From IMG/VR virus record IMGVR_UViG_3300046787_000200, positions 186,001 through 250,000 of that record: a DNA stretch of 64,000 nt. One strand, written 5' to 3'. Below the pieces are notes generated by a model. That model had not been told where the DNA came from. It saw only the letters and a list, made by a program, of their open reading frames with translations, and did no database searches. The position numbers were made by a program, and so were the translations under genes. This document shows positions 50,098 through 60,342 of this stretch, piece by piece. The first letter of the stretch is position 1. Every line of letters starts with the position of its first letter.

Positions 50098-50125
50098 CAA
50101 TAATTAAACAAAAATACTACTTTTT

Positions 50126-50150
50126 GCCCCGTATCTTATGGGGCTTTTTT
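50126..50150 (+). terminator. Rho-independent terminator
   Basis: GCCCC-N9-GGGGC plus T6. Confidence 0.8.
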
Positions 50151-50161
50151 GTAGCCAAAAT

Positions 50162-50190
50162 TTGACAATAAATCATTTTGGGTCTATAAT
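50162..50190 (+). promoter_or_regulatory. Consensus sigma70 early promoter (repeat cassette)
   Basis: TTGACA-17-TATAAT; near-identical to the 50432 copy. Confidence 0.9.
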
Positions 50191-50219: not shown

Positions 50220-50435
50220 ATGAACTTCACACAATACATGCTTGATTTTTATGGTCCAAATGGTATCTATCCACTGGGTTTCAATGCAACACAAATTAGT
50301 TTAGCTACCCAACTTTACAAAACCCGTCTACCCGAGGGTGAAGAATTCTACGGAGATACAGTAGACCGTGAACGTGTCCGTGATATCATCTTGGCCGCAC
50401 GTGAATCAGTGGTTCCCGAATACGCCAAAATTTGA
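50220..50435 (+). CDS. Hypothetical early protein
   Basis: FYGPNGIY...FYGDTVDRERVRDII; AAGGA RBS. Confidence 0.75.
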   Translation: MNFTQYMLDFYGPNGIYPLGFNATQISLATQLYKTRLPEGEEFYGDTVDRERVRDIILAARESVVPEYAKI

Positions 50436-51092: not shown

Positions 51093-51836
51093 ATGCCAGG
51101 ATTTGTTAACGTATCACACATGACCAATCGTCAGATCCAACGCATGGGTCACGCTGATGACGACGGTGGCAATACATATCGCACAAGAACCAACACTAAG
51201 AAAATTGTGTTGAATTACAATGCCGACGATGTATGGGGTGCGGCAGTTCAGGCACAACGTATCAATAATGCTTATGTTAAGTTGAGTATGATTTCAGAGT
51301 CGGATCCTAATCTTACAAAACTATCCAATCGTATGATTGTTGAAAAGTTGTTAGCTGATCCATTCACTATTACCGATGAAGACCGTGAAGAAGGTAAAAA
51401 GGTTCGTGCATACTATCAAGCATTCACTTTCAAAATCTTGCAAGGCAAACGATTGAATGAGTTTGATAATACCGCAATGTTGATTGCCAACAGGGATGCT
51501 ATTACTAGCACTTATGATATTGCAGTTATTGCTAGTTTGCCCTCTGTATACGAGCGTGGTGTTAAACGTCAAACGGTTGATCAACGTATTAGTTTTGCTA
51601 AAGGTGGCTATATTAGTGCAATTGGTAATAAAGTATCACTTACTGTTGAAGTACTGAGGTCAATTTATTCACTTAAGTGGGCTACAACCTATATTACCGG
51701 TATTACAGATGATGACCAAGTTGTATTCTTTGCATATAAGAATGAATTAGAAGTAGGTAAGATGGTTGACATTTACGGTACTGTCAAAGCACATAGAGAT
51801 AATACTACCCAACTTAATCGTGTAAAGGTTATTTAA
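51093..51836 (+). CDS. Hypothetical protein with C-terminal OB-fold-like domain
   Basis: GTVKAH...TQLNRVK. Confidence 0.65.
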   Translation: MPGFVNVSHMTNRQIQRMGHADDDGGNTYRTRTNTKKIVLNYNADDVWGAAVQAQRINNAYVKLSMISESDPNLTKLSNRMIVEKLLADPFTITDEDREEGKKVRAYYQAFTFKILQGKRLNEFDNTAMLIANRDAITSTYDIAVIASLPSVYERGVKRQTVDQRISFAKGGYISAIGNKVSLTVEVLRSIYSLKWATTYITGITDDDQVVFFAYKNELEVGKMVDIYGTVKAHRDNTTQLNRVKVI

Positions 51837-52063
51837 TGAATACAGAATTGATTCAGAAATTGAAGTCGCAATGTATCTTCCGTGAACAACGAGGTACTAC
51901 TGCTTTTAACAGTTATATGGTTGATCGGTTTGATAGTGAAAAGTTTGCAGAACTGATTGTGAGAGAGTGTGACCGTTATGCCCGTAGTGTGTGGGAACAT
52001 GGTCCGTTGTTGGGTAGGGATTTGTTAATCCATTTTGGAGTTGAGGAGATGAGTGATGATTAA
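51836..52063 (+). CDS. KFAELIVREC/HFGVEE family small protein
   Basis: Shared motifs with the 55.5-58.4 kb paralogues. Confidence 0.75.
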   Translation: MNTELIQKLKSQCIFREQRGTTAFNSYMVDRFDSEKFAELIVRECDRYARSVWEHGPLLGRDLLIHFGVEEMSDD

Positions 52064-52184: not shown

Positions 52185-52637
52185 ATGGGACTTGATATGT
52201 ATGCTTATGTTGCCAGCAAAAAAGGTCAACAAAGTGAGTTTTATGAAACTGCTGAGTTTGATGCAACCACTAGTGAGTTTGTAAGTAAAACAGTTACCAA
52301 GCCATACGAAATTGCTTATTGGCGTAAGCATCCTAACTTGCATGGTTGGATGGAAAAGTTGTGGTTACGCAAGAATGGGTACCCAACAAATTCTAATGAC
52401 CAATTCATTGAGGGTAAAGAACCACCAAGCTTCAATGGTATTGAACTTGAGCTAACGTGGGATGATTTGGATGAACTTGAACGAGTTATTCGTCATGGTC
52501 AACTTCCAAACACAGAAGGTTTCTTTTTTGGTAAGCCTTCTGATAATCGTTACTATGAACAAGACCTTGAGTTTGTAAACAACGCTAAAGCAGAAGTGTT
52601 CTTAGGATTAAAAGTATTTTATAATAGTAGCTGGTGA
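52185..52637 (+). CDS. Conserved phage hypothetical protein
   Basis: MGLDMY, YWRKHPNLHGWM, GFFFG, YNSSW. Confidence 0.8.
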   Translation: MGLDMYAYVASKKGQQSEFYETAEFDATTSEFVSKTVTKPYEIAYWRKHPNLHGWMEKLWLRKNGYPTNSNDQFIEGKEPPSFNGIELELTWDDLDELERVIRHGQLPNTEGFFFGKPSDNRYYEQDLEFVNNAKAEVFLGLKVFYNSSW

Positions 52638-53077
52638 TGCATAAGTTTTATTTCGCATATGGTATGAACACAAACATTGCCGAGATGGCTAATCGTTGCC
52701 CAAAAGCAACCAGTCTCGGTAAGTGTATATTAGAGAACTTTGAGTTAAGGTTCCGTACTCATGCAGATATTGACTTAGTGCCCGGCAGTTGTATGGAAGG
52801 TGTGCTATGGGAGATCACACCTGAATGTGAAGATGCATTGGATAGATTAGAAGGCTATCCTTATTATTACAATAAGATTAATGTAGTGGTCAATGACAAT
52901 ATCATTGCTATGGCTTACATTATGAATCAAAAAGGTAAAGAAGAGCCTCCCGGTTTAAGTTATGAAAAGTGTTTGATTGAAGGATACACATCACACGGAT
53001 TGAATGTTGATTGGTTGACAGAAACTATTGATGATGTTATAATGAATTATGAACTTAACGAAATACAGCAAAAATAG
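52637..53077 (+). CDS. Gamma-glutamylcyclotransferase-like (AIG2/GGCT)
   Basis: YFAYGMN, GVLWEI, LDRLEGYP. Confidence 0.85.
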   Translation: MHKFYFAYGMNTNIAEMANRCPKATSLGKCILENFELRFRTHADIDLVPGSCMEGVLWEITPECEDALDRLEGYPYYYNKINVVVNDNIIAMAYIMNQKGKEEPPGLSYEKCLIEGYTSHGLNVDWLTETIDDVIMNYELNEIQQK

Positions 53078-53444
53078 AGTAATGGAAACGTTTCAGCATT
53101 GGCATGTTCCTCGTGACTTTGCTGAGCCAATGTATAACTACCTTGTGTTTGGATACTATCCGGGTAGTTGTTTTACAAGTGTCCTTGCCAATGATTTTTT
53201 AGGTGCTATGTTCCGTAGTCATCCTAGCAATACTATTGAAGCATTTAAGGCTCTTGCTGGTTGGATGACTGATACTATCCCTAAACAAGCGCAAGGTAGT
53301 TACGGTGCAGTTGAAGATTGGATTAAGTTAGATGATGATGAACGCAGAACTATCCTTGAAAAGCACGATTTGATTTTCACTACTGAAAATGAATCTTGGA
53401 TGATTCTTAAAGATGAACCTATCAATGAAGTTGTATTATATTAA
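53049..53444 (+). CDS. Hypothetical protein
   Basis: PGSCFTSVLANDF. Confidence 0.75.
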   Translation: MNLTKYSKNRVMETFQHWHVPRDFAEPMYNYLVFGYYPGSCFTSVLANDFLGAMFRSHPSNTIEAFKALAGWMTDTIPKQAQGSYGAVEDWIKLDDDERRTILEKHDLIFTTENESWMILKDEPINEVVLY

Positions 53445-53453
53445 GGAAATGTA

Positions 53454-53939
53454 ATGGCTATACTATATCGTATTAAACCTGTAGACAAAAAATCAGTTGA
53501 AGCATTTTATGATGTTTACAAGCAAATGCCTGATGGCACTATCCGTGGTTGGAGTGTGACTGAACTCTATCGGTGGGGGCAAGGCTTTGTTGAAAATGAA
53601 GATGAACTGCCTTTTAGTGATGACCGGTATCATTGTGTCGATCCTACAATTGGTTGGGGATGTGAACTTGATGACCTCTGTGCAGTAGACTTTGAGTTTG
53701 ATGACAGTTTTACAGACGAAGAAAAGGCCGAGATTGAACAACACTGGGAAGACGGTGGTGCTGGATGGCTCTACGACGGGGAGCATGATTGGGAAGTTGA
53801 AGAGGATACATTCACTATTTTGGGTCCGTTCACGGTTGACAAAATAGACGAAGATGTGTATAATGTTAGTATTGAAACAGTAGAACTTAAACAGCGTCCA
53901 CCATTTGTAGCAACAACAGCGTGGCCATTCTCAGGATAA
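53454..53939 (+). CDS. Acidic hypothetical protein
   Basis: AAGGA RBS. Confidence 0.75.
   Translation: MAILYRIKPVDKKSVEAFYDVYKQMPDGTIRGWSVTELYRWGQGFVENEDELPFSDDRYHCVDPTIGWGCELDDLCAVDFEFDDSFTDEEKAEIEQHWEDGGAGWLYDGEHDWEVEEDTFTILGPFTVDKIDEDVYNVSIETVELKQRPPFVATTAWPFSG
53836..53864 (+). promoter_or_regulatory. Consensus sigma70 promoter inside a CDS, upstream of the ligase
   Basis: TTGACA-17-TATAAT with extended TG. Confidence 0.75.
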
Positions 53940-53942
53940 AAT

Positions 53943-54143
53943 ATGACAAATTTAGAAGTAAGAGAGAAGCTTTTGCAGGCACAAGATTTACTATCCGATG
54001 TTTATCATTGGGCTAAGCAACCACATACCAAGTTTACTGGTATGGATATGAATAGTCAGATAGCTAGGTACACAAGCGATGCCGATTCTTCTATTAATGA
54101 TTCCCTTGAGGAATTAAAACATCCCAATGGATGTATGCCTTAA
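53943..54143 (+). CDS. Hypothetical protein
   Basis: AGGA RBS. Confidence 0.65.
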   Translation: MTNLEVREKLLQAQDLLSDVYHWAKQPHTKFTGMDMNSQIARYTSDADSSINDSLEELKHPNGCMP

Positions 54144-54153
54144 GGAGTTAAGA

Positions 54154-55503
54154 ATGAGTGCAAGTTGGATTAATAAACTAAACGAATCAGATAGTCGCCT
54201 TCATAAGGAAGATGTACTCAAACAGGCATTAGAGGCAAGTGTCCTCGGTAGTGACAATGCTATCAAATTTTTGACATTGACTAAACTTACATATAATCCC
54301 TATGTGACATTCGGTGTCAGAAAAGTTCCTGATACTGTGGGCATCGTTGATGCAGAAAATCCTTGGGAAGACTTTGATAAACTATTGTGTGAGTTAGGTT
54401 CACGAGGCTTGTCAGGTAATGCCGCACTTGATGCTATCAATGAAATGAGTGAGCGGTTTAACAGTGACGAATGGAATACATTCTGTGCTCCTGTTATTCG
54501 CAGAGACTTACGAGCAGGTATTAGCGATAAGACAATCAATAAAGTTTGTAAAAAGACTGACTACGAGATTCCTGTATTCGGTTGTCAGTTAGCAACTAAC
54601 TGTGAAGGTCGCCCAGAGATGAAGGGTACTAAGCGTTTAGAGCCTAAACTTGATGGTGTGCGTGTATTGATGTTTGTGATTCCCGGTGCAGATTTCGGCA
54701 TCACTACAGTTTGCTATAGTCGTAATGGTAAAGTGTTTGATAACTTTACACATATTGAACAACAAGTTAGTGATAACTTTGTTAAGATTGTTCGTGCTTG
54801 TAATGGTACCGATCAAGGTCGTAGTTTGATTGATGGCTTTGTATTAGATGGTGAAGTGATTGGTAATACATTCCAAGAACTGATGCGACAGGCACGCCGT
54901 AAGACTGATGTACAAGCCGATGATAGTGTGTTTAATATCTTTGATATTATTCCATTAAGTGATTTCCGTCAAGGTCATTATAATGCACAATTGCGTAAGC
55001 GTATCGCATTACTTGATAGTATGCGCCCAGTCGTTGACGAAATGCCCAATGTAGAGTTGTTGCCACACATCATGGTTGACTTAGATACTGCGGCAGGCAA
55101 GGATCAGTTCAATAGATATTGTAGAGATATGGTAGAAGCTGGTTTTGAAGGTGTGATGATTAAAGAGTTAGAAGCACCATACATCTGTAAGCGTAGCACT
55201 GATTGGATGAAATATAAACCCACATTAACGGTAGATTTGGAGGTCGTATGTGTTGAAGAAGGTACTGGTAGAAACTTGGGAAGACTTGGAGCATTGGTTT
55301 GTCATGGAGTTGACGACGGGAAAGAAATTACAGTCAATGTGGGTAGTGGCTTTAGTGATGGTGATCGAGATGATTACTGGACTAATCGCAATCTGGTCAT
55401 TGGTCGAACTGCTGAAGTATTGTGTGATGTGATTACACAGAACAGGGATGGTACTTACAGTTTGCGTTTCCCTCGCTTTATTAGATTCAGGGATGACAAA
55501 TGA
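54154..55503 (+). CDS. ATP-dependent DNA ligase
   Basis: EPKLDGVR, SRNGK, LDGE, EGVMIK, WMKYK, VGSGFSD, SLRFPRF. Confidence 0.96.
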   Translation: MSASWINKLNESDSRLHKEDVLKQALEASVLGSDNAIKFLTLTKLTYNPYVTFGVRKVPDTVGIVDAENPWEDFDKLLCELGSRGLSGNAALDAINEMSERFNSDEWNTFCAPVIRRDLRAGISDKTINKVCKKTDYEIPVFGCQLATNCEGRPEMKGTKRLEPKLDGVRVLMFVIPGADFGITTVCYSRNGKVFDNFTHIEQQVSDNFVKIVRACNGTDQGRSLIDGFVLDGEVIGNTFQELMRQARRKTDVQADDSVFNIFDIIPLSDFRQGHYNAQLRKRIALLDSMRPVVDEMPNVELLPHIMVDLDTAAGKDQFNRYCRDMVEAGFEGVMIKELEAPYICKRSTDWMKYKPTLTVDLEVVCVEEGTGRNLGRLGALVCHGVDDGKEITVNVGSGFSDGDRDDYWTNRNLVIGRTAEVLCDVITQNRDGTYSLRFPRFIRFRDDK

Positions 55504-55760
55504 ACGAAAAGATTAAACTACTTGCCAAACAGGCTGGAGGCAATCCTAACTATAAAGCATTCAGGGGCCACCCCTTACCTCCCCCACCTGACTACATCGA
55601 TCCTGCTACAGTAGATTTGGCTAAGTTCGCAGAGTTGATTGTTCGGGAATGTGCCAGAGTTATTGATCGTGGCGATGGTGAAATGTCAAGTATGGATGAA
55701 ACCATTTGGTGCAATGTGTGTAGAGACGATATTTTAGAACATTTTGGAGTGGAAGAATGA
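55500..55760 (+). CDS. KFAELIVREC/HFGVEE family small protein
   Basis: Shared motifs. Confidence 0.75.
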   Translation: MNEKIKLLAKQAGGNPNYKAFRGHPLPPPPDYIDPATVDLAKFAELIVRECARVIDRGDGEMSSMDETIWCNVCRDDILEHFGVEE

Positions 55761-55990
55761 CTTATGAAGAAGCAAAAAATCTTAAATCGTTTAAGAACTA
55801 TTGCAACTGTGGTGGTAGTGCTTGGACGATGAATGATCGTAATCCTGCAAGACCACATATGAGTTGGTGCCCACAGATTGAAGAATACAATGAGTGGTAT
55901 GATTTAGTTGGGGCAGAACTTATTGCCAAAGACAGAAAAGAAACTAAAAGTAAGTTGGGTTATAGTAGAATAGGATTGGGGAATGTATGA
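55757..55990 (+). CDS. Hypothetical Cys/His protein
   Basis: CNCGG...PHMSWCPQ; ATGA-coupled. Confidence 0.7.
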   Translation: MTYEEAKNLKSFKNYCNCGGSAWTMNDRNPARPHMSWCPQIEEYNEWYDLVGAELIAKDRKETKSKLGYSRIGLGNV

Positions 55991-56214
55991 AAGTTGAGAT
56001 TTGTCGGCCAGACGGAACACCATATCTAACCCTGCGTAAGGATGATAGGTTAGCTTATATCCAAATACACGATTATGATTTTTTGGGAGATCCCATTGAG
56101 TTTAACTTTGATAGGCGAACTATCCCAGCACTGATTGATGCACTCAGCAGACTTCAGCGTGGAGAAGATAGTTCAACCATTCGCACCCACTACTTTAATC
56201 AGGATATAGAATGA
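55987..56214 (+). CDS. Hypothetical protein
   Basis: ATGA-coupled. Confidence 0.65.
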   Translation: MKVEICRPDGTPYLTLRKDDRLAYIQIHDYDFLGDPIEFNFDRRTIPALIDALSRLQRGEDSSTIRTHYFNQDIE

Positions 56215-56390
56215 TACACATTACTGAAGAAGGCGGAGTGATTCGCAATGGTTTGAATTTTTACCCGCTAACGGATAAAAGCAGTTTTGGGTTTAGGTTT
56301 CGTTATGGATCAAAAATCTTTTGGTTTCGGTATAGCCGAATCACTCAACGCTGGACCATTAAAAACAGCACCAATCTGGTTGATAGTTAA
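56211..56390 (+). CDS. 59-aa hypothetical protein (not in ORF track)
   Basis: AGGA RBS; ATGA-coupled. Confidence 0.6.
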   Translation: MIHITEEGGVIRNGLNFYPLTDKSSFGFRFRYGSKIFWFRYSRITQRWTIKNSTNLVDS

Positions 56391-56432
56391 AAATTTACTT
56401 TGGTATTGCCCTAAAATTTACTTTGGTATTGC
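56390..56432 (+). repeat. Perfect 20-bp direct repeat x2
   Basis: AAAATTTACTTTGGTATTGC at 56390 and 56413. Confidence 0.9.
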
Positions 56433-56462
56433 TCCGGTATAAGAGTAATACTTTTTGCTGAC

Positions 56463-56491
56463 TTGACACAAAATCCATTTGGTTGTATAAT
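56463..56491 (+). promoter_or_regulatory. Consensus sigma70 early promoter
   Basis: TTGACA-17-TATAAT. Confidence 0.88.
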
Positions 56492-56522
56492 ATACACATA
56501 GACAGACAAAAAGGAGAGAAAA

Positions 56523-56726
56523 ATGCGTAGTATCAAAGAAGTCAAAACAGAACTTGAAAAACTCCGTGAAGAATACGAAAGTAAAGTTTCCTTGCTCAAA
56601 ACTGAAATAGTAAGTATCCGTGAAAGTCGTGGATATAAACTCAAAGTACCCAAGTATGAAACTTATTACGAACCAGGACGCTCAACAATGCCCACACCCT
56701 CAGGTGGTATGGGTGCAGGATATTAA
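56523..56726 (+). CDS. Hypothetical early protein
   Basis: AAGGAG RBS. Confidence 0.7.
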   Translation: MRSIKEVKTELEKLREEYESKVSLLKTEIVSIRESRGYKLKVPKYETYYEPGRSTMPTPSGGMGAGY

Positions 56727-56728
56727 GG

Positions 56729-56757
56729 TTGACAATAAATGAGTATTATGTTATAAT
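56729..56757 (+). promoter_or_regulatory. Consensus sigma70 early promoter (repeat cassette)
   Basis: TTGACA-17-TATAAT followed by AGAATCTTAGACAGT as at 50461. Confidence 0.9.
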
Positions 56758-56790
56758 AGAATCTTAGACAGTAAAGAAAAGGACTAACAA

Positions 56791-57030
56791 ATGAACAAAC
56801 GAATTAAAGAACTTGCTGAACAATGTACTACAATCAATGATTCTACAACTATTCCAGTTGATAAGGATTTTGACTATGAAAAGTTCGCCGAGTTGATTAT
56901 TGCTGAATGTATTGATGTATTCAGTAAAGATTTACCGGATACTACAAGCCCGGATTATCAACTAGGTAGCCTTCCAGAAGTCGTCAATCGTATCGCTAAT
57001 GTAGCAGAACATTTCGGAGTTGAACTATGA
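56791..57030 (+). CDS. KFAELIVREC/HFGVEE family small protein
   Basis: Shared motifs. Confidence 0.75.
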   Translation: MNKRIKELAEQCTTINDSTTIPVDKDFDYEKFAELIIAECIDVFSKDLPDTTSPDYQLGSLPEVVNRIANVAEHFGVEL

Positions 57031-57398
57031 TCGTTCCGGATTTAATCAAAGCAGTTGAACAAGGATTCAGGAAACATACTATGATTGCCGCAAAAGAAGC
57101 CAAAGCACTCTACCACTATAGTGGTGCAGAGGTTGAACAGTTTCTAAAAACTGAAGTTGAGCCTCGAGTGACTGAAGCCGCAAAAGGTGGTAAGAGGTCG
57201 GCTATGATTCATCTTGGCTCAAAAGGTCCGTACGAATATCTTAGTCAATTAGTTACTCCACAACAAATGGCAGCGGTAGCCAGATTGATTGAATTGGGCT
57301 ATAGTGCTCAGATTCAATTGTACGATGAAAAGTATGTTCCAGGCGGTCCAGCTGACGGATCTTTTGAAGCATTCTATGGCATTCAAATTGGGTGGTAA
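57027..57398 (+). CDS. Hypothetical protein
   Basis: L.ELGY...IQIGW; ATGA-coupled. Confidence 0.7.
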   Translation: MIVPDLIKAVEQGFRKHTMIAAKEAKALYHYSGAEVEQFLKTEVEPRVTEAAKGGKRSAMIHLGSKGPYEYLSQLVTPQQMAAVARLIELGYSAQIQLYDEKYVPGGPADGSFEAFYGIQIGW

Positions 57399-57401
57399 AT
57401 T

Positions 57402-57545
57402 ATGAATTGGCAAGAAGATCCTGATAATCCATTGAAAGAAAAGTTCGCCGAGTTGATTGTTCGGGAATGTGCGTTAGTTATACAAAAGAAAGTTGGACCA
57501 AAGTCTGCCTTAGATGTATTAGAACATTTCGGAGTTGAAGAATGA
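57402..57545 (+). CDS. 47-aa KFAELIVREC/HFGVEE family protein (not in ORF track)
   Basis: MNWQEDPDNPLKEKFAELIVRECALVIQKKVGPKSALDVLEHFGVEE. Confidence 0.75.
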   Translation: MNWQEDPDNPLKEKFAELIVRECALVIQKKVGPKSALDVLEHFGVEE

Positions 57546-57676
57546 GTTGCGATATTATTCCACCACCACCAAGACAGAGATGTGAAGGTTGTGGGCCGTT
57601 AATTAATGGGAAACATACAAGTGTTGTTTGCAAATTTTTACAATGGGTTGATAAACATTTCGGAGTTAAAGAATGA
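57542..57676 (+). CDS. 44-aa protein ending HFGVKE (not in ORF track)
   Basis: Flanked on both sides by the 23-bp junction repeat. Confidence 0.7.
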   Translation: MSCDIIPPPPRQRCEGCGPLINGKHTSVVCKFLQWVDKHFGVKE

Positions 57677-57903
57677 ACGAACGAATTAGAGAACTTTTTA
57701 AAAAGGCTGGCGGAAAAACATCCACCCGTAATCTCGCAAGCAACCCTGTCCAAGTGGTAAAAACACATGAACTTTGGGATGACCGTATTGAAAAGTTCGC
57801 CGAGTTGATTGTGAAAGAATGTATTGATATTGCTGAACAAACAAGATACGATGGTAAAGTAGTAGCCGAGCGAATCAAGTTTGTTTTCGGAGTTGAAGAA
57901 TGA
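57673..57903 (+). CDS. KFAELIVREC/HFGVEE family small protein
   Basis: Shared motifs. Confidence 0.75.
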   Translation: MNERIRELFKKAGGKTSTRNLASNPVQVVKTHELWDDRIEKFAELIVKECIDIAEQTRYDGKVVAERIKFVFGVEE

Positions 57904-58100
57904 ACGAAAATATAAAGGCAGGGGCAAACATTCACGCAGGTGATGGTGGGTATAGTGAAGGCACACAAGAAGCATACGATGAGTTTGTAAAGATCCGCAA
58001 CTATCAAGTTATTTGCCCTAAGTGTGGAGTAGATAGACTTAAAGTTGATTGTCCCAATATCAATAGATTAGATTGTGGTATTAAGGTAGAAGCACAATGA
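57900..58100 (+). CDS. Small protein with CPKC zinc-ribbon tail
   Basis: CPKCGVDR.K..CP......C....EAQ. Confidence 0.7.
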   Translation: MNENIKAGANIHAGDGGYSEGTQEAYDEFVKIRNYQVICPKCGVDRLKVDCPNINRLDCGIKVEAQ

Positions 58101-58423
58101 AAGAACTGATTAGAAAGTTTGAAAAAGAATCTGGCCTTGAAATCTACGGACTCGGAGCGAGACGAGAAAAGTGGGAACACTGTATGGAAAAGTTCACTGA
58201 GTTGGTTGTTCGGGAATGTGTTTCTATCTGTAAAGATAAAGAACGCCCAAATCTATATGGTATTAAAGAAGTTGAAGTAGCGATTAAACAACATTTTGGT
58301 ATTATTGAACCTAAAGGCTGGGTCTGCCCCAAATGCAAGGCTGATAGAACTAAGATTCCTTGCCCATTAGGTTTTGGAGCACAAGTAGATGGTCGTTGCC
58401 CTATGACTGCGGAGGCACAATGA
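58097..58423 (+). CDS. KFTELVVREC family protein fused to a CPKC zinc-ribbon tail
   Basis: Both motif sets present. Confidence 0.75.
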   Translation: MKELIRKFEKESGLEIYGLGARREKWEHCMEKFTELVVRECVSICKDKERPNLYGIKEVEVAIKQHFGIIEPKGWVCPKCKADRTKIPCPLGFGAQVDGRCPMTAEAQ

Positions 58424-58596
58424 TTAAAGTATTATTTGCATTTGTATTACTATTTGCTGTATTTTATGCGGGTATTACACTTGCCCGAAAAATGACAGGT
58501 AAAGAGGCATTAGCCTTGACAAAAATTGCAGGATACAGTATACTATCTTCATTACTGACACTTGCAGTATTAATCTCAATCGTTGTAATTTTTTAA
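58420..58596 (+). CDS. Two-TM membrane protein
   Basis: GGAGG RBS; hydrophobic; contains internal TTGACA-17-TATACT at 58516-58544. Confidence 0.7.
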   Translation: MIKVLFAFVLLFAVFYAGITLARKMTGKEALALTKIAGYSILSSLLTLAVLISIVVIF

Positions 58597-58604
58597 GGAC
58601 TATA

Positions 58605-58691
58605 ATGTTTCCTGAATTTCTTGTGAGACCATTATATTTTATTCTTGGTTTCGTATTTTGTTTCTTTCTTTTTGTAAAAGGTATTATCTAA
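58605..58691 (+). CDS. 28-aa membrane peptide (not in ORF track)
   Basis: AAGGA RBS; hydrophobic. Confidence 0.5.
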   Translation: MFPEFLVRPLYFILGFVFCFFLFVKGII

Positions 58692-58692
58692 A

Positions 58693-59505
58693 ATGAATCG
58701 TTCTATTAAACTCTCTCTTATCGCTATCGCAGTTGCATTGACTAGTGCTTGCACCCGTATTGAAACTGGTGAGGTCGGTGTTCGTGTTGGCTTTGACAAA
58801 CAAGTCAAGCCCGGTGAACTTGAACCCGGTAGCTTCAACCAAGTGCTTGTCGGTGATGTGTTGACCTTCCCATACAAGGATGTTAATATCACTATTGACA
58901 ATATGACTCCTGTTGCGAAAGACAACAGCACTATGAAAGACCTTGATGCGGTGATTGTTTACAACATCAACAAGAATCAAGCCGCTGAACTGTATTCTAC
59001 CAAGAACCGCAGTTTCCACGCTGACTTCAAAGGCGACACTTACTTGATGTATAACTACATTGTTCAGAATGCCCGTAATGCTATCTACAAGTCTGCACGA
59101 AAGTATGAAGCATTGGATATGGCAGACAATCGCACTGAGATGGAGAATTACATCAAAGATGAAATCACACGCAACCTTGCAGAAGAAAAACTAGATGGTA
59201 GTATCACTATCACACAGGTTATGATTCGTACTGTAGTTCCAAGTGATACAGTTGTTGCAAGTGCAAATGATTTGGTTCGTAGTAAAAACGAATTGAAGCA
59301 AAAAGAAGTTGAAGTTAAAACTGCTGAAGCAGAGGCCCGTCGTATTGCGGCTCTAGCACAAAATGCAGGTGCTATTCAATATATGGATGCTCAGGCTCGT
59401 ATGAAGCAAGCAGATGCGGCACTTGAAACTGCTAAGGCTATTGCATCATTCAAGGGTAATACTCTTGTGATTGGTGCTGGAACTAATGTCAATGTAGGTA
59501 AATAA
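58693..59505 (+). CDS. SPFH/band-7 (prohibitin-like) membrane protein
   Basis: RIETGEVGVRV.F; C-terminal AEAEA coiled coil; lipobox-like TSAC. Confidence 0.85.
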   Translation: MNRSIKLSLIAIAVALTSACTRIETGEVGVRVGFDKQVKPGELEPGSFNQVLVGDVLTFPYKDVNITIDNMTPVAKDNSTMKDLDAVIVYNINKNQAAELYSTKNRSFHADFKGDTYLMYNYIVQNARNAIYKSARKYEALDMADNRTEMENYIKDEITRNLAEEKLDGSITITQVMIRTVVPSDTVVASANDLVRSKNELKQKEVEVKTAEAEARRIAALAQNAGAIQYMDAQARMKQADAALETAKAIASFKGNTLVIGAGTNVNVGK

Positions 59506-59508
59506 ATA

Positions 59509-59613
59509 GCATGTACCGACTATTCTATAAAATAGGATATGAGGTCGGTACATGCCTCTCATTATTATTGAGCAGGCAATCAATCACAATGTGGGCTATG
59601 CTCACAATTTTTT
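59509..59613 (+). ncRNA. Candidate small structured RNA
   Basis: TAAATA at 59503; perfect 12-bp stem, second stem, terminator hairpin plus T run. Confidence 0.45.
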
Positions 59614-59634
59614 ATATTTTAAAAGGAAATTAAA

Positions 59635-59952
59635 ATGGCAACAAGAGTAATGATGAAGAATACTAAAACAGGTATTCGCAAAGAAGGTTATTTTGGATTC
59701 AGTTGGACATACTTGTTCTTTGGATTCTGGGTACCATTGTTTAGAGGTCACTTCCCAATGGCAGGTATTCACCTAGTCATTAGTTTCATCAGTGTCTTTA
59801 TGTTTGGAATTCCACAACTTGTTCTTGCTTTCTTCTTCAATAAGTTTTATACTCTAAGACTCATTGAAGATGGTTATGAATTTGATGATGATGAACAATT
59901 AGTAAAAACTGCATCTACCATCTTAAATATCGCACAACCTACAAAATCATGA
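59635..59952 (+). CDS. Membrane protein (DUF2628/HrgC-like)
   Basis: GFSWTYLFFGFWVPLFRG, FYT..LIEDGY. Confidence 0.7.
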   Translation: MATRVMMKNTKTGIRKEGYFGFSWTYLFFGFWVPLFRGHFPMAGIHLVISFISVFMFGIPQLVLAFFFNKFYTLRLIEDGYEFDDDEQLVKTASTILNIAQPTKS

Positions 59953-60083
59953 TGACCTTGAACGAATTCTCTATGTTTGTCGCTGGAGTTATCTGGGGCA
60001 TCTTTATTATTAAGCCGTTATGGGAAATAGGGGCAAAGATTTACAAGAACGCTAAGGAGGCGCAAAATGGTAACAATCGTTAA
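59949..60083 (+). CDS. 44-aa membrane peptide (not in ORF track)
   Basis: ATGA-coupled; hydrophobic. Confidence 0.5.
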   Translation: MMTLNEFSMFVAGVIWGIFIIKPLWEIGAKIYKNAKEAQNGNNR

Positions 60084-60342
60084 ACATGAGTGGCATCAAC
60101 ATGATCGCCAATACGCAATTGAACTTGATGAGGCACTATTAAGTGAAATCTATCCTGATTTGGATGAAGATGAAATCGCACAGAAACTTGCTGATATTGA
60201 ATCAGGTGAAGTTGATTACGAAGAAGTTATCAACGATGCCTACGAGAATGATGTAGAGATTGAATGGGACTTTCAATATGATGATTGTTGGACTGACCGC
60301 AAAGGTGGTTATGATGTTACATATGAATTGGTCAATAAATGA
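60067..60342 (+). CDS. Acidic hypothetical protein
   Basis: AAGGAGG RBS. Confidence 0.75.
   Translation: MVTIVKHEWHQHDRQYAIELDEALLSEIYPDLDEDEIAQKLADIESGEVDYEEVINDAYENDVEIEWDFQYDDCWTDRKGGYDVTYELVNK

What the first reader, a model, noticed from the sequence alone, without database searches (positions are those of the whole stretch)
55500..58423. Second cassette system: early mini-genes built from two DNA-conserved blocks, one carrying SD + stop + next start
Seen: block A (AAGTTCGCCGAGTTGATTGTTCGGGAATGT-like, KFAELIVREC) at 51941, 55623, 56881, 57441, 57793 and 58190. Block B (AACATTTCGGAGTTGAAGAATGA-like, HFGVEE*) at 52031, 55738, 57008, 57523, 57654 and 57881. Block B contains GGAG and usually an ATGA overlap, so any sequence placed behind it is translated and any sequence in front gains a stop. 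The segments between the blocks are unrelated, and 57542-57676 is an unrelated ORF bracketed by two B blocks. GC-rich codons (GCC, CGG, TTC) are kept. Inference: recombination at these blocks shuffles hypervariable segments and captures new genes, paralleling the QGVAEG array.
Basis: partly seen in the sequence, partly recalled or inferred. Interest (0 to 1): 0.72.

Follow-up and report, generated by a model that had tools for sequence, protein, structure and literature searches.

The report
Shuffled mini-gene family in freshwater phages
A cluster of tiny early genes in a 352-kb freshwater jumbo phage belongs to a very large, unnamed phage protein family whose three constant segments are also conserved as DNA and mark the points where the two variable segments are swapped between genes and between phages.

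Summary
Block A lies at all six stated coordinates and block B at the six stated places; both are far above chance (0.05 and 0.03 matches expected).

There are three conserved blocks, not two. They are the constant parts of a real 65-90 aa protein family with at least 6,896 clusters at 50% identity. It has no Pfam, PHROG or NCBIfam name, no solved fold match, and was found only in uncultured, mostly freshwater phage contigs.

Synonymous sites in all three blocks are conserved across about 107 otherwise unrelated viral contigs (GCC 84% against 19% background, CGG 54% against 6%, CGA 91% against 12%, GGA 98% against 23%).

The variable modules assort almost freely: 175 N-modules and 227 C-modules occur in 306 combinations. 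DNA identity falls from 80-95% to random exactly at the block edges. One metagenomic contig is a chimera of two of this window's genes, crossing over inside the 33-nt block A.

The two closest relatives lack the whole 4.56-kb segment that carries the cluster.

Block B supplies a ribosome-binding site and an ATGA stop/start overlap.

The biochemical function is unknown. The shuffling reading is supported; "capture of unrelated genes" is only weakly supported.

The parts
55503..60066 (+). 4.56-kb accessory segment of about 20 small genes that carries the cluster. It begins at the ligase stop (AAATGA, overlapping the g55500 start) and ends at the start of the MVTIVKHEW gene.
   Evidence: It is absent from the two closest relatives (L001 and the 348,701-bp record G001/L132). 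Both are 75-87% identical on either side and have about 25 nt between the ligase and that gene. Its GC content is not unusual.
51836..52063 (+). g51836, a full-length family member (75 aa) that lies outside the cluster.
   Evidence: Family profile E 6.5e-24. An ortholog is present in relatives L001-L008 and G001. Its block A has drifted at synonymous sites (76% identical to the family consensus).
55500..55760 (+). g55500, a full-length member (86 aa): N block 55500-55535, proline-rich N-module, block A 55623-55652, C-module, block B with ATGA at 55740-55760.
   Evidence: AlphaFold2 model pLDDT 85.4. Its N-module is found with 29 different C-modules elsewhere.
56791..57030 (+). g56791, a full-length member (79 aa): N block 56791-56822, block A 56881-56910, block B 57010-57030 (ends CTATGA).
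   Evidence: It sits behind a consensus sigma-70 promoter at 56729-56757. In one metagenome its N-module is replaced while the flanks stay near-identical (X7 record 26).
57402..57545 (+). g57402, a truncated member (47 aa): block A 57441-57470, C-module and block B 57525-57545. It has no N block and no N-module.
   Evidence: Profile positions 26-71, E 1.4e-18. Its block A equals the family DNA consensus at 33 of 33 positions.
57542..57676 (+). g57542 (44 aa): a new Cys-rich N-terminus joined to a family C-half and block B 57656-57676.
   Evidence: Profile positions 43-71, E 9e-7. Both its start and its stop are ATGA overlaps.
57673..57903 (+). g57673, a full-length member (76 aa): N block 57673-57696, beta-hairpin N-module, block A 57793-57822, block B 57883-57903.
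   Evidence: Profile E 1.6e-29. AlphaFold2 model pLDDT 92.7. Its N-module type occurs with 36 different C-modules.
57900..58100 (+). g57900 (66 aa): an N-block-like start (ATGAACGAAAAT, MNENIK) followed by a Cys-rich CPKC..DR.K..CP module.
   Evidence: Its start is a copy in repeat family D2. The Cys module is shared with the tail of g58097 (BLASTP E 2e-6).
58097..58423 (+). g58097 (108 aa): a family member (block A 58190-58219, degenerate internal block B at 58292-58309) fused to a C-terminal Cys-rich extension.
   Evidence: Profile positions 1-71 match residues 1-71, E 6.6e-27. There is a weak rubredoxin-like hit in the extension.
56425..56491 (+). A terminator-like hairpin (56425-56452) directly followed by a perfect TTGACA-17-TATAAT promoter (56463-56491), inside the cluster.
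   Evidence: A 20-nt tandem duplication lies at 56390-56432.
56729..56790 (+). A perfect sigma-70 promoter plus a conserved leader, driving g56791. It is one copy of a dispersed promoter and leader cassette.
   Evidence: Other copies are at 50432 and 50755, and it matches repeated elements in L001 and G001.
55757..57398 (+). Non-family small ORFs interleaved in the array (55757-55990, 55987-56214, 56211-56390, 56523-56726, 57027-57398). Most are joined to their neighbours by ATGA overlaps.
   Evidence: They have no Pfam, PHROG or PADLOC assignment, except that g57027 matches phrog_5321 (unknown function).

Best explanation
The cluster is an array of members, some truncated or fused, of a very large, unnamed, phage-only family of 65-90 aa early proteins.

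Each protein has three constant segments:
- an N-terminal helix (MNERIKELAEQAG);
- a central helix (EKFAELIVREC);
- a C-terminal helix end (IKEHFGVEE).

These three are inferred to make up the common scaffold and to carry two replaceable modules of unrelated sequence and even different structure.

The three constant segments are also conserved as DNA, at synonymous sites, across the whole family. They are the places where homologous recombination, within arrays and between co-infecting phages, exchanges the N-module, the C-module and whole genes in frame. The family therefore exists as a combinatorial library.

The 3' block has a second job. Its GGAG lies 7 nt before an ATG that overlaps the TGA stop. 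The 5' block begins ATGA(AC). Each unit therefore runs from ATGA to ATGA and is translationally coupled to whatever follows it.

In this genome the array lies in a 4.56-kb accessory segment transcribed from consensus sigma-70 (early-type) promoters.

Shown: the family, the DNA-level conservation, the module assortment, the breakpoints at the blocks, the gain or loss between relatives, and the coupling signals.

Inferred: that homologous recombination is the mechanism; that keeping the blocks recombination-proficient is why their synonymous sites stay fixed; and that the modules bind varying (host) targets.
For: Family:
- At least 7,992 clusters at 90% identity (capped search) and 6,896 clusters at 50% identity at E<=1e-3, mostly full-length matches of 65-90 aa.
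- Atlas clusters are 100% viral. BFVD matches are all uncharacterised proteins of uncultured phages.
- dN/dS is about 0.12 in shared modules.

Fold:
- g57673 model: pLDDT 92.7, with helices at 3-11, 36-56 and 61-72 and a hairpin at 15-33.
- g55500 model: pLDDT 85.4, with the same three helices but a coil or short helix in place of the hairpin.

DNA-level conservation:
- In 141 genes from 107 viral contigs of 34-51% GC, the block A codons are AAG .93, TTC .80, GCC .84, GAG .86, TTG .86, ATT .99, CGG .54, GAA .92 and TGT .94.
- Background for the first five and CGG is .35, .30, .19, .25, .25 and .06.
- Block B has GGA .98 and GTT .98. Block N has CGA .91 and CTT .73.
- One Glu position prefers GAG and the other Glu positions prefer GAA, so codon bias cannot be the explanation.
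- The same bias is seen in 146 further members that were not selected by the DNA pattern.

Shuffling:
- Of 1,603 protein pairs with N-modules at least 70% identical, 1,212 have C-modules under 30% identical.
- 175 N-clusters and 227 C-clusters give 306 combinations. One N-type occurs with 36 different C-types, and there are five four-gamete squares.

Breakpoints:
- Pairs that share neither module are 28% identical in the flanks and about 90% identical in the 30 nt of block A.
- Pairs that share only the N-module fall to random at position +30. Pairs that share only the C-module rise at position -3.
- Linkage also breaks at blocks N and B.
- In four other metagenomes, contigs pile up on the blocks, and their joints and loose ends sit at the block edges.

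In this locus:
- Contig L133 is 89.6% identical to 55499-55652. It then switches, inside block A, to 56878-57031 (85%).
- Relatives lack 55503-60066. They carry other family members at other sites, one of them inserted exactly at an ATGA.

Coupling: 103 of 144 genes end in ATGA. 91 of 99 downstream frames are at least 40 aa, and only 22 of 103 are family members.

Promoters: two sites match the sigma-70 consensus at 12 of 12 positions.
Against: - No recombination event was observed directly. Everything is inferred from comparison of assembled sequences, and assemblers can themselves create chimeras at shared 30-nt repeats. Logan contigs are built from 31-mers. Against this, the chimera L133 is 10-15% diverged from the window on both sides, and the same pattern holds across IMG/VR, JGI and ENA assemblies.
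- Identity of the blocks within a genome is barely higher than between genomes (0.85 against 0.83). Local gene conversion is therefore not what keeps the blocks alike, and a cis-acting nucleotide function cannot be excluded.
- In pairs that share a module, synonymous identity in the module (0.66-0.71) equals that in block A (0.71). The blocks therefore do not evolve measurably more slowly than recently shared DNA.
- The binomial tests treat genes as independent.
- The function of the proteins is unknown: no family, defence or fold match was found.
Confidence: 0.72

Rival explanations
1. This is an ordinary tandem paralogue family. The blocks are simply the conserved protein motifs, and the DNA similarity in the window is left over from recent local duplication or local gene conversion.
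For: The blocks are the conserved core of a real protein family. The five clustered copies share codons that the distant copy g51836 does not share.
Against: - The clustered copies match the family-wide DNA consensus rather than each other. g57402 matches it at 33 of 33 positions, and identity within loci (0.85) is about the same as between loci (0.83).
- The variable parts are at random identity right up to the block edges, and they differ in predicted structure.
- Modules recur in other combinations in other phages.
Confidence: 0.06
2. The synonymous sites are fixed because each block is a cis-acting nucleic-acid signal: a ribosome-binding site with coupling for block B, a translation-initiation region for block N, and an unknown protein- or RNA-binding site for block A. 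On this view shuffling is a by-product of the resulting identity, not its cause.
For: - Block B contains GGAG 7 nt before an ATGA, with GGA 98% and GTT 98%.
- 72% of genes end in ATGA, and real-length ORFs follow.
- Block N covers codons 1-12, where mRNA sequence affects initiation.
- CpG is 1.8-fold enriched in the blocks.
- Block identity is family-wide rather than local.
Against: - Block A lies in mid-gene and has no conserved pairing partner. Its predicted pairs fall mostly in the variable parts.
- No inverted repeat or promoter-like element was found in it.
- The vertically inherited g51836 lineage has drifted at the block A synonymous sites (4-5 of 10 third positions match the consensus, and WIN and L001 differ from each other).
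Confidence: 0.17
3. Diversification is programmed. A phage nuclease, for example the small stand-alone GIY-YIG protein that often lies nearby, or another dedicated enzyme, cuts at or near the conserved blocks and drives repair-mediated module exchange, as free-standing homing endonucleases do.
For: The commonest neighbouring gene family (20 of 107 loci, always on the same strand, typically about 1 kb away) is a 104-115 aa GIY-YIG protein. This genome has one copy. The blocks are CpG-rich with recurring TTCG/CGAA.
Against: - In this genome the GIY-YIG gene lies 45 kb from the array, and 87 of 107 loci show none in the fetched stretch.
- No enrichment test against contigs that lack the family was possible.
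- Small nucleases are common in phage early and DNA-metabolism regions anyway.
- There is no reverse transcriptase in the genome, so a diversity-generating retroelement is excluded.
Confidence: 0.05

Closest known systems
gp38 adhesins and distal tail-fibre genes of T-even phages: hypervariable segments separated by conserved glycine-rich motifs (PMC3157838; the work of Tetart et al. 1998 on recombination between conserved motifs is cited there)
   Same: One protein in which short, strictly conserved motifs are thought to form the structural core and to separate hypervariable segments. Each segment draws on a limited palette that is re-assorted between phages by recombination at or near the conserved motifs.
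   Different: - No sequence or fold relation to gp38.
- These are 65-90 aa early-region proteins, not virion adhesins.
- There are only two variable modules, on a scaffold with three constant helices.
- The family runs to thousands of clusters and occurs as tandem arrays.
- The 3' conserved motif also serves as ribosome-binding site and stop/start for the next gene.
PeSL mobile regulatory cassettes of T4-type phages (PMC2839356, PMC4122927)
   Same: Short DNA-conserved elements, repeated among small non-essential early genes in hyperplastic regions, at which recombination inserts, deletes and replaces ORFs between close relatives. The window also has dispersed promoter and leader cassettes and a terminator-promoter composite.
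   Different: PeSLs are intergenic promoter plus stem-loop elements. Here the joints are coding, in frame, and part of the protein scaffold, so recombination makes chimeric proteins as well as new gene orders. No mini-circles were looked for.
Pilin antigenic variation in Neisseria (pilE/pilS mini-cassettes); from general knowledge, not tested here
   Same: Variable mini-cassettes are bounded by short DNA-conserved coding segments that serve as homology for exchange.
   Different: That is a one-way gene conversion from silent copies into a single expression locus within one genome. Here all copies appear to be expressed genes, and the exchange pool spans many phages.
Modular theory of phage evolution with conserved 'linker' sequences at module borders (Susskind and Botstein); from general knowledge
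   Same: Homologous recombination at short conserved sequences that flank interchangeable modules.
   Different: Here it applies within a gene of about 230 nt, at 24-36-nt joints, rather than between functional gene blocks.
Integron gene cassettes and diversity-generating retroelements
   Different: There are no attC-like inverted repeats at the joints and no reverse transcriptase in the genome. The variation is by replacement of whole segments of different length, not by adenine-specific substitution.

Membership tests
The MNERIKELA / KFAELIVREC / HFGVEE small phage protein family (unnamed; defined here) | Full-length match to the family profile (N helix, central helix, C-terminal motif) in a protein of about 65-90 aa | tested here: met
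   g51836, g55500, g56791, g57673 and g58097 match profile positions 1-70/71 at E 1e-24 to 1e-29. g57402 and g57542 match only in part. There are thousands of full-length relatives.
The MNERIKELA / KFAELIVREC / HFGVEE small phage protein family (unnamed; defined here) | Family-wide DNA consensus in the blocks, including synonymous sites | tested here: met
   The five clustered copies are 88-100% identical to the 33-nt consensus of block A, and g51836 is 76% identical.
PeSL regulatory cassettes (T4-type phages) | The repeated element is an intergenic sigma-70 early promoter joined to a stem-loop terminator | tested here: not met
   Blocks N, A and B lie inside reading frames and contain no promoter or terminator match. 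Separate promoter and terminator elements do exist in the cluster (56425-56491 and 56729-56757).
PeSL regulatory cassettes (T4-type phages) | Indels and replacements between close relatives end at the repeated elements | tested here: met
   This was tested for the blocks and the ATGA joints, not for the promoters. L133 crosses over within block A. Indel junctions lie on ATGA at 55503, 52058 and 58420.
gp38-type adhesin design (conserved motifs and hypervariable segments) | Homology to gp38 or a role at the tail-fibre tip | tested here: not met
   No Pfam or PHROG tail-fibre or adhesin hit. The genes lie in an early region next to DNA ligase and behind sigma-70 promoters.
gp38-type adhesin design (conserved motifs and hypervariable segments) | Conserved motifs form the structural core and the variable segments between them are re-assorted | tested here: met
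   In both models the three blocks are the three helices, while the modules between them differ in structure. Modules are re-assorted. Coordinates were not inspected for helix packing.
Diversity-generating retroelement | A reverse transcriptase plus a template/variable repeat pair that differs at adenines | tested here: not met
   No RVT_1 match in the 352-kb genome. The variable segments differ in length and are unalignable.
Integron cassette array | attC imperfect inverted repeats at cassette borders, with an integrase and attI | tested here: not met
   Only direct repeats were found at the borders and no inverted repeats at the blocks. An integrase was not searched for.
Known anti-defence or defence protein families | A profile match | tested here: not met
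   No PADLOC hit for the family members or their neighbours. Anti-defence libraries were not available.

The most novel reading that the evidence does not exclude
The three blocks are maintained, at the level of their synonymous sites, because they are recombination joints. On this reading a community-wide pool of freshwater phages keeps a plug-compatible, in-frame combinatorial library of hundreds of N-modules and hundreds of C-modules on one scaffold of three constant helices. This library would supply fast-changing early proteins that bind variable host targets, for example defence or takeover targets. The joints would then be an evolvability device, comparable to exon shuffling without introns, possibly stimulated by a co-resident small GIY-YIG nuclease.
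Probability: 0.3. Interest if true: 0.85.

Novelty: new variant of a known kind. Interest (0 to 1): 0.7.

Why it matters
Modular shuffling at conserved sequences is an old idea in phage evolution, but clean and quantifiable cases are few. The main ones are tail-fibre adhesins and the PeSL promoter cassettes.

This case is a very large family (at least 6,900 clusters at 50% identity). It is invisible to Pfam, PHROGs and NCBIfam, and no match was found in the GenBank phage collection searched. In it the joints, the modules and the breakpoints can be read directly from metagenomes. Synonymous-site conservation of 24-36-nt coding joints can be measured against a random-identity background a few bases away.

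This makes three questions testable:
- how short a homology natural phage recombination uses;
- whether selection can hold synonymous sites in order to keep genes exchangeable;
- what a phage gains from a combinatorial set of small early proteins.

The practical gains are a profile for annotating thousands of hypothetical proteins, and a warning that short-read assemblies of these regions can be chimeric.

Tried and rejected
- **Family and defence libraries.** Pfam, PHROGs, NCBIfam and PADLOC gave no hit above noise for any family member.
- **Fold searches.** Foldseek against PDB gave a best E of 0.32. VIA-align against 48,161 chains gave a best Z of 4.3. BFVD and the Atlas returned only unnamed relatives.
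- **GenBank phages.** There was no megablast match for the cluster and no tblastn match for two members, even at E<=1. The family was not found in that collection of 50,697 records at this sensitivity.
- **Bacterial genomes.** There were only 12 hits in 185,579 species genomes. All were on short contigs of freshwater MAGs from unrelated phyla and are most simply explained as binned phage DNA, so they give no host clue.
- **Literature.** No paper contains the motifs.
- **RNA structure as the reason for block A conservation.** Its base-pair probabilities go mainly to variable sequence and there is no conserved partner. This is a weak test.
- **Local concerted evolution.** Rejected, because identity within loci is about equal to identity between loci.
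- **Foreign composition of the 4.56-kb segment.** None was seen.
- **Diversity-generating retroelement and integron readings.** Rejected.
- **Ascertainment bias of the degenerate DNA pattern.** Checked with 146 members found by profile only; they show the same codon bias.
- **Technical failure.** The search for related loci with the 7-sequence alignment failed because it had no conserved stretch, so a degenerate DNA pattern was used instead.
- **Not run.** A complex prediction (no binding claim is made), a metatranscriptome look-up, and a scan of metagenome contigs.

Full report
**Setting**

The window is bases 186,001-250,000 of a single 352,012-bp virus record with 36.6% GC. Nearly all of its long ORFs are on the + strand. 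The finding lies just downstream of an ATP-dependent DNA ligase at 54127-55503, which is only about 33% identical to any ligase in GenBank phages. The closest relatives are freshwater-lake metagenome contigs and a 348,701-bp IMG/VR record.

**Checking the observation**

Reading the sequence and its ORFs confirms block A at 51941, 55623, 56881, 57441, 57793 and 58190. Block B has its H/F-F-G-V codons at 52031, 55740, 57010, 57525, 57656 and 57883.

- An 18-nt core of block A with up to 3 mismatches occurs five times, against 0.05 expected.
- An 18-nt block B pattern occurs five times, against 0.03 expected.
- The repeat finder returns the same families without prior knowledge. It also returns a third family at the gene starts (ATGAACGAA...; D2).
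- The clustered copies share codons that are rare in this genome: CGG is 1% of Arg, GCC 10% of Ala and GAG 21% of Glu.
- The distant copy g51836 uses other codons.
- Within the window, the segments between the blocks are 3-35% identical, which is unalignable.

**What the genes are**

A profile of the seven ORFs finds no further copies in the 352-kb genome. It finds an enormous family outside it:

- at least 7,992 clusters at 90% identity in a capped search;
- 6,896 clusters at 50% identity at E<=1e-3, most of them 65-90 aa and matched end to end.

All members are unnamed. No Pfam, PHROG, NCBIfam or PADLOC model matches. Atlas clusters are 100% viral. BFVD matches are uncharacterised proteins of uncultured phages.

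The family gave no tblastn match in 50,697 GenBank phage records. In 185,579 prokaryote species genomes it occurs only on 12 short contigs of freshwater MAGs from unrelated phyla. No paper contains the motifs.

AlphaFold2 with a 120-sequence alignment gives a confident model of g57673 (pLDDT 92.7):

- helix 3-11, which is the N block;
- a beta-hairpin at 15-33, which is the N-variable module;
- helix 36-56, which is block A plus the start of the C-variable module;
- helix 61-72, which is the end of the C-module plus block B.

g55500 (pLDDT 85.4) has the same three helices, but a proline-rich coil with a short helix in place of the hairpin. The blocks are therefore the constant scaffold of a real protein, and the modules are structurally different inserts rather than diverged copies of one another.

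No solved structure resembles the fold (best Foldseek E 0.32, best VIA Z 4.3). Shared modules evolve under purifying selection, with dN/dS about 0.12.

Within the window:

- g57402 lacks the N block and the N-module.
- g57542 keeps only a C-half (profile positions 43-71, E 9e-7) behind a new Cys-rich N-terminus.
- g58097 carries an extra Cys-rich tail, which it shares with the neighbouring g57900.

**DNA-level conservation across the family**

A fully degenerate back-translation of KFAELIVREC was scanned over IMG/VR. This gave 144 complete genes from about 107 contigs of 4-348 kb and 34-51% GC.

The third codon positions were left free by the pattern, yet they are nearly fixed (background in brackets):

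| Block | Codon frequencies |
|---|---|
| A | AAG .93 (.35), TTC .80 (.30), GCC .84 (.19), GAG .86 (.25), TTG .86 (.25), ATT .99, CGG .54 (.06), GAA .92, TGT .94 |
| B | CAT 1.0, TTC .82, GGA .98 (.23), GTT .98 (.38) |
| N | AAC .86, CGA .91 (.12), CTT .73 (.17) |

- One Glu position prefers GAG and the others prefer GAA, so codon-usage bias cannot be the cause.
- The blocks have the same GC content as the variable parts.
- The bias holds across the GC range.
- It also holds in 146 further members that were found by profile only and so were not selected by the DNA pattern.
- The exact 30-mer of g57402 is the commonest form in the sample, seen 27 times.

**Shuffling**

Among 349 distinct proteins, similarity of the two modules is bimodal and largely uncoupled.

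- Of 1,603 pairs with N-modules at least 70% identical, 1,212 have C-modules under 30% identical and 366 have C-modules at least 70% identical.
- Single-linkage clustering gives 175 N-types and 227 C-types in 306 combinations.
- One N-type (that of g57673) is seen with 36 C-types. Another (that of g55500) is seen with 29.
- There are five four-gamete squares.

Anchoring DNA pairs from different contigs on block A gives a clean picture:

- Pairs that share neither module are 28% identical in the flanks and about 90% identical in the 30 nt of the block.
- Pairs that share only the N-module are 78-95% identical up to the end of the block and random from position +30.
- Pairs that share only the C-module are random up to position -3 and 80-88% identical afterwards.

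Linkage also breaks at the other two blocks:

- At the 3' joint, 9 pairs share the C-module but not the downstream DNA, 3 share the downstream DNA but not the C-module, and none share both.
- At the 5' joint the corresponding counts are 17, 9 and 2.

Contigs of four other freshwater or aquatic metagenomes were laid on 55300-60200. They pile up on the blocks, and their joints and loose ends fall at 56822, 57437/8, 57470/2, 57521/3, 57545, 57653/4, 57696, 57789/90 and 57822/4, which are the block edges. One 742-nt contig matches 56508-56796 and 56877-57007, the latter without a single difference. The 81 nt of the g56791 N-module between them are replaced.

**Evidence within this locus**

Protein P0012 combines the N-module of g55500 with the C-module of g56791. 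Its contig L133 relates to the window as follows:

- 89.6% identical to window 55499-55652;
- equally similar (0.8) to both registers over the 30 nt of block A;
- 85% identical to 56878-57031;
- then continues into 58419-59508 and 59945-60299.

L133 is therefore related to the window by an exchange between the two direct copies of block A that lie 1,258 nt apart, plus a second indel whose junction is the ATGA after block B.

The two closest relatives (75-87% identical in the flanking genes) lack 55503-60066 entirely. The left junction of that segment is the ligase stop overlapping the g55500 start.

The relatives also carry family members where the window has none. One lies at L001 2159-2371, with a block A 88-94% identical to the window's. 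A diverged member is inserted exactly at the GTGATGA after the g51836 ortholog. Synteny is therefore not fixed.

**Block B and the ATGA joints**

Family-wide, 103 of 144 genes end in ATGA. GGAG lies 7 nt before that ATG. The frame that opens there is at least 40 aa long in 91 of 99 cases, and it is a family member in only 22 of 103.

Because the genes start ATG-AAC/T, their own start is also an ATGA. Units therefore run from ATGA to ATGA, and they abut in arrays. The profile search found 331 family ORFs in the fetched loci.

The cluster contains two perfect TTGACA-17-TATAAT promoters and a terminator-like hairpin, which fits early transcription by the host polymerase.

**Interpretation**

- *Shown:* a real protein family; three constant segments that are conserved as DNA; free assortment of the modules with breakpoints in those segments; gain and loss of members between close relatives; and a coupling signal in block B.
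- *Inferred:* the exchanges are homologous recombination at the 24-36-nt joints (47-60 nt where block B abuts block N), and the synonymous sites stay fixed because members whose joints drift drop out of the exchanging pool.
- *Consistent with this:* the vertically inherited g51836 lineage, which always has the same module pair, has the most drifted block A (4-5 of 10 third positions match the consensus, and WIN and L001 differ from each other). Shuffled members keep 8-10 of 10. This rests on three genes.
- *Against a purely local mechanism:* block identity within a genome is hardly higher than between genomes.
- *Main rival:* a cis-acting role for the nucleotides. This is clearly true for block B and plausible for block N. 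For block A I found no conserved RNA partner, inverted repeat or promoter.
- *Lead only:* a nuclease-driven version rests on a small GIY-YIG gene being the commonest neighbour (20 of 107 loci).
- *Caveat:* short-read assemblers can create chimeras at 30-nt repeats. The divergence of L133 from both parents and the agreement between independent assemblies argue against this, but reads were not examined.

**Comparison with known systems**

The design works like the T-even gp38 adhesin, where conserved glycine-rich motifs form the core and separate re-assorted hypervariable segments (PMC3157838). At the level of gene order it works like PeSL-mediated shuffling in T4-type hyperplastic regions (PMC2839356, PMC4122927).

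It is a member of neither. It has no homology to gp38 and no virion role, and its joints are coding rather than promoter/terminator elements. Diversity-generating retroelements and integrons are excluded.

I rate it a new variant of a known kind: intragenic, in-frame, DNA-conserved joints in a very large unannotated family of small early proteins.

**Verdict**

The claim of gene capture is only suggested. The biochemical function is unknown.

Noticed in passing
window 50162, 50432, 50755 and 56729 (also 35456, 35677, 39694, 53015, 53836, 56463): There are ten perfect TTGACA-17-TATAAT sites on the + strand of the window and none on the - strand. Three of them (50432, 50755, 56729) also share the leader TATAATAGAATCTTAGACAGT...AAAGGA. 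This is a dispersed promoter and leader cassette that also recurs in relatives L001 and G001. The site at 50120-50190 follows a terminator hairpin.
   Followed up: partly
window 58420-60083: The rest of the 4.56-kb accessory segment encodes small membrane-like proteins (58420-58596, 59635-59952, 59949-60083) and a 270-aa SPFH/Band_7 protein with a lipoprotein-like N-terminus (58693-59505; Pfam E 1.4e-18). The same TM plus Band_7 pair follows a family gene on contig L133.
   Followed up: partly
loci L011-L126 (for example L095:4084-4410); G000 289727-290065 (-), outside the window: A 104-115 aa stand-alone GIY-YIG protein is the commonest neighbour of family genes. It occurs in 20 of 107 loci, always on the same strand, 0-5.6 kb away. 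This genome has one copy 45 kb from the array. It could be a recombination-initiating nuclease or merely a frequent early gene.
   Followed up: partly
window 57900-58100 and 58310-58423: A second shared module: the Cys-rich CPKC..DR.K..CP segment of g57900 recurs as the C-terminal extension of g58097 (BLASTP E 2e-6), and both end in EAQ. In metagenome X5, a contig replaces 58000-58118 with 31 other letters.
   Followed up: partly
family alignment A2 (g57673 residues C50 and H71): One Cys (in R-E-C) is invariant and the His of H-F-G-V is present in at least 90% of 120 members. Many C-modules add further Cys residues. This may be a metal site or a dimer contact. It was not tested.
   Followed up: no
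blocks N, A and B family-wide: The odd synonymous choices (TTC-G, GCC-G, CGG, CGA) make the blocks 1.8-fold richer in CpG than the variable parts at equal GC content. TTCG/CGAA recurs five times in the roughly 90 nt of consensus.
   Followed up: partly
It was not analysed further.
   Followed up: no
window 52634-53077: A 147-aa AIG2/GGACT-like (gamma-glutamyl cyclotransferase fold) protein (Pfam E 7e-9 and 2e-8). The 52635-54141 stretch is another variable spot: G001 lacks most of it.
   Followed up: no
L001 17833-20228 (relative; matches window sequence up to 63916 and extends beyond the window end): The relatives encode a ClpX-like AAA protein, a ribosomal protein S21 homologue and an HSP70/DnaK-like protein just downstream of the region studied.
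   Followed up: no
window 57027-57398; protein P0178: The N-terminus of g57027 (MIVPDLIKAV...) recurs in another metagenomic protein as a 26-aa leader fused in frame to a family member. g57027 itself matches only phrog_5321 (unknown function, E 6e-7).
   Followed up: no
proteins P0121, P0130 and P0175: Some metagenomic members are in-frame tandem fusions or partial duplications with two block A copies, as expected from unequal exchange between blocks.
   Followed up: no
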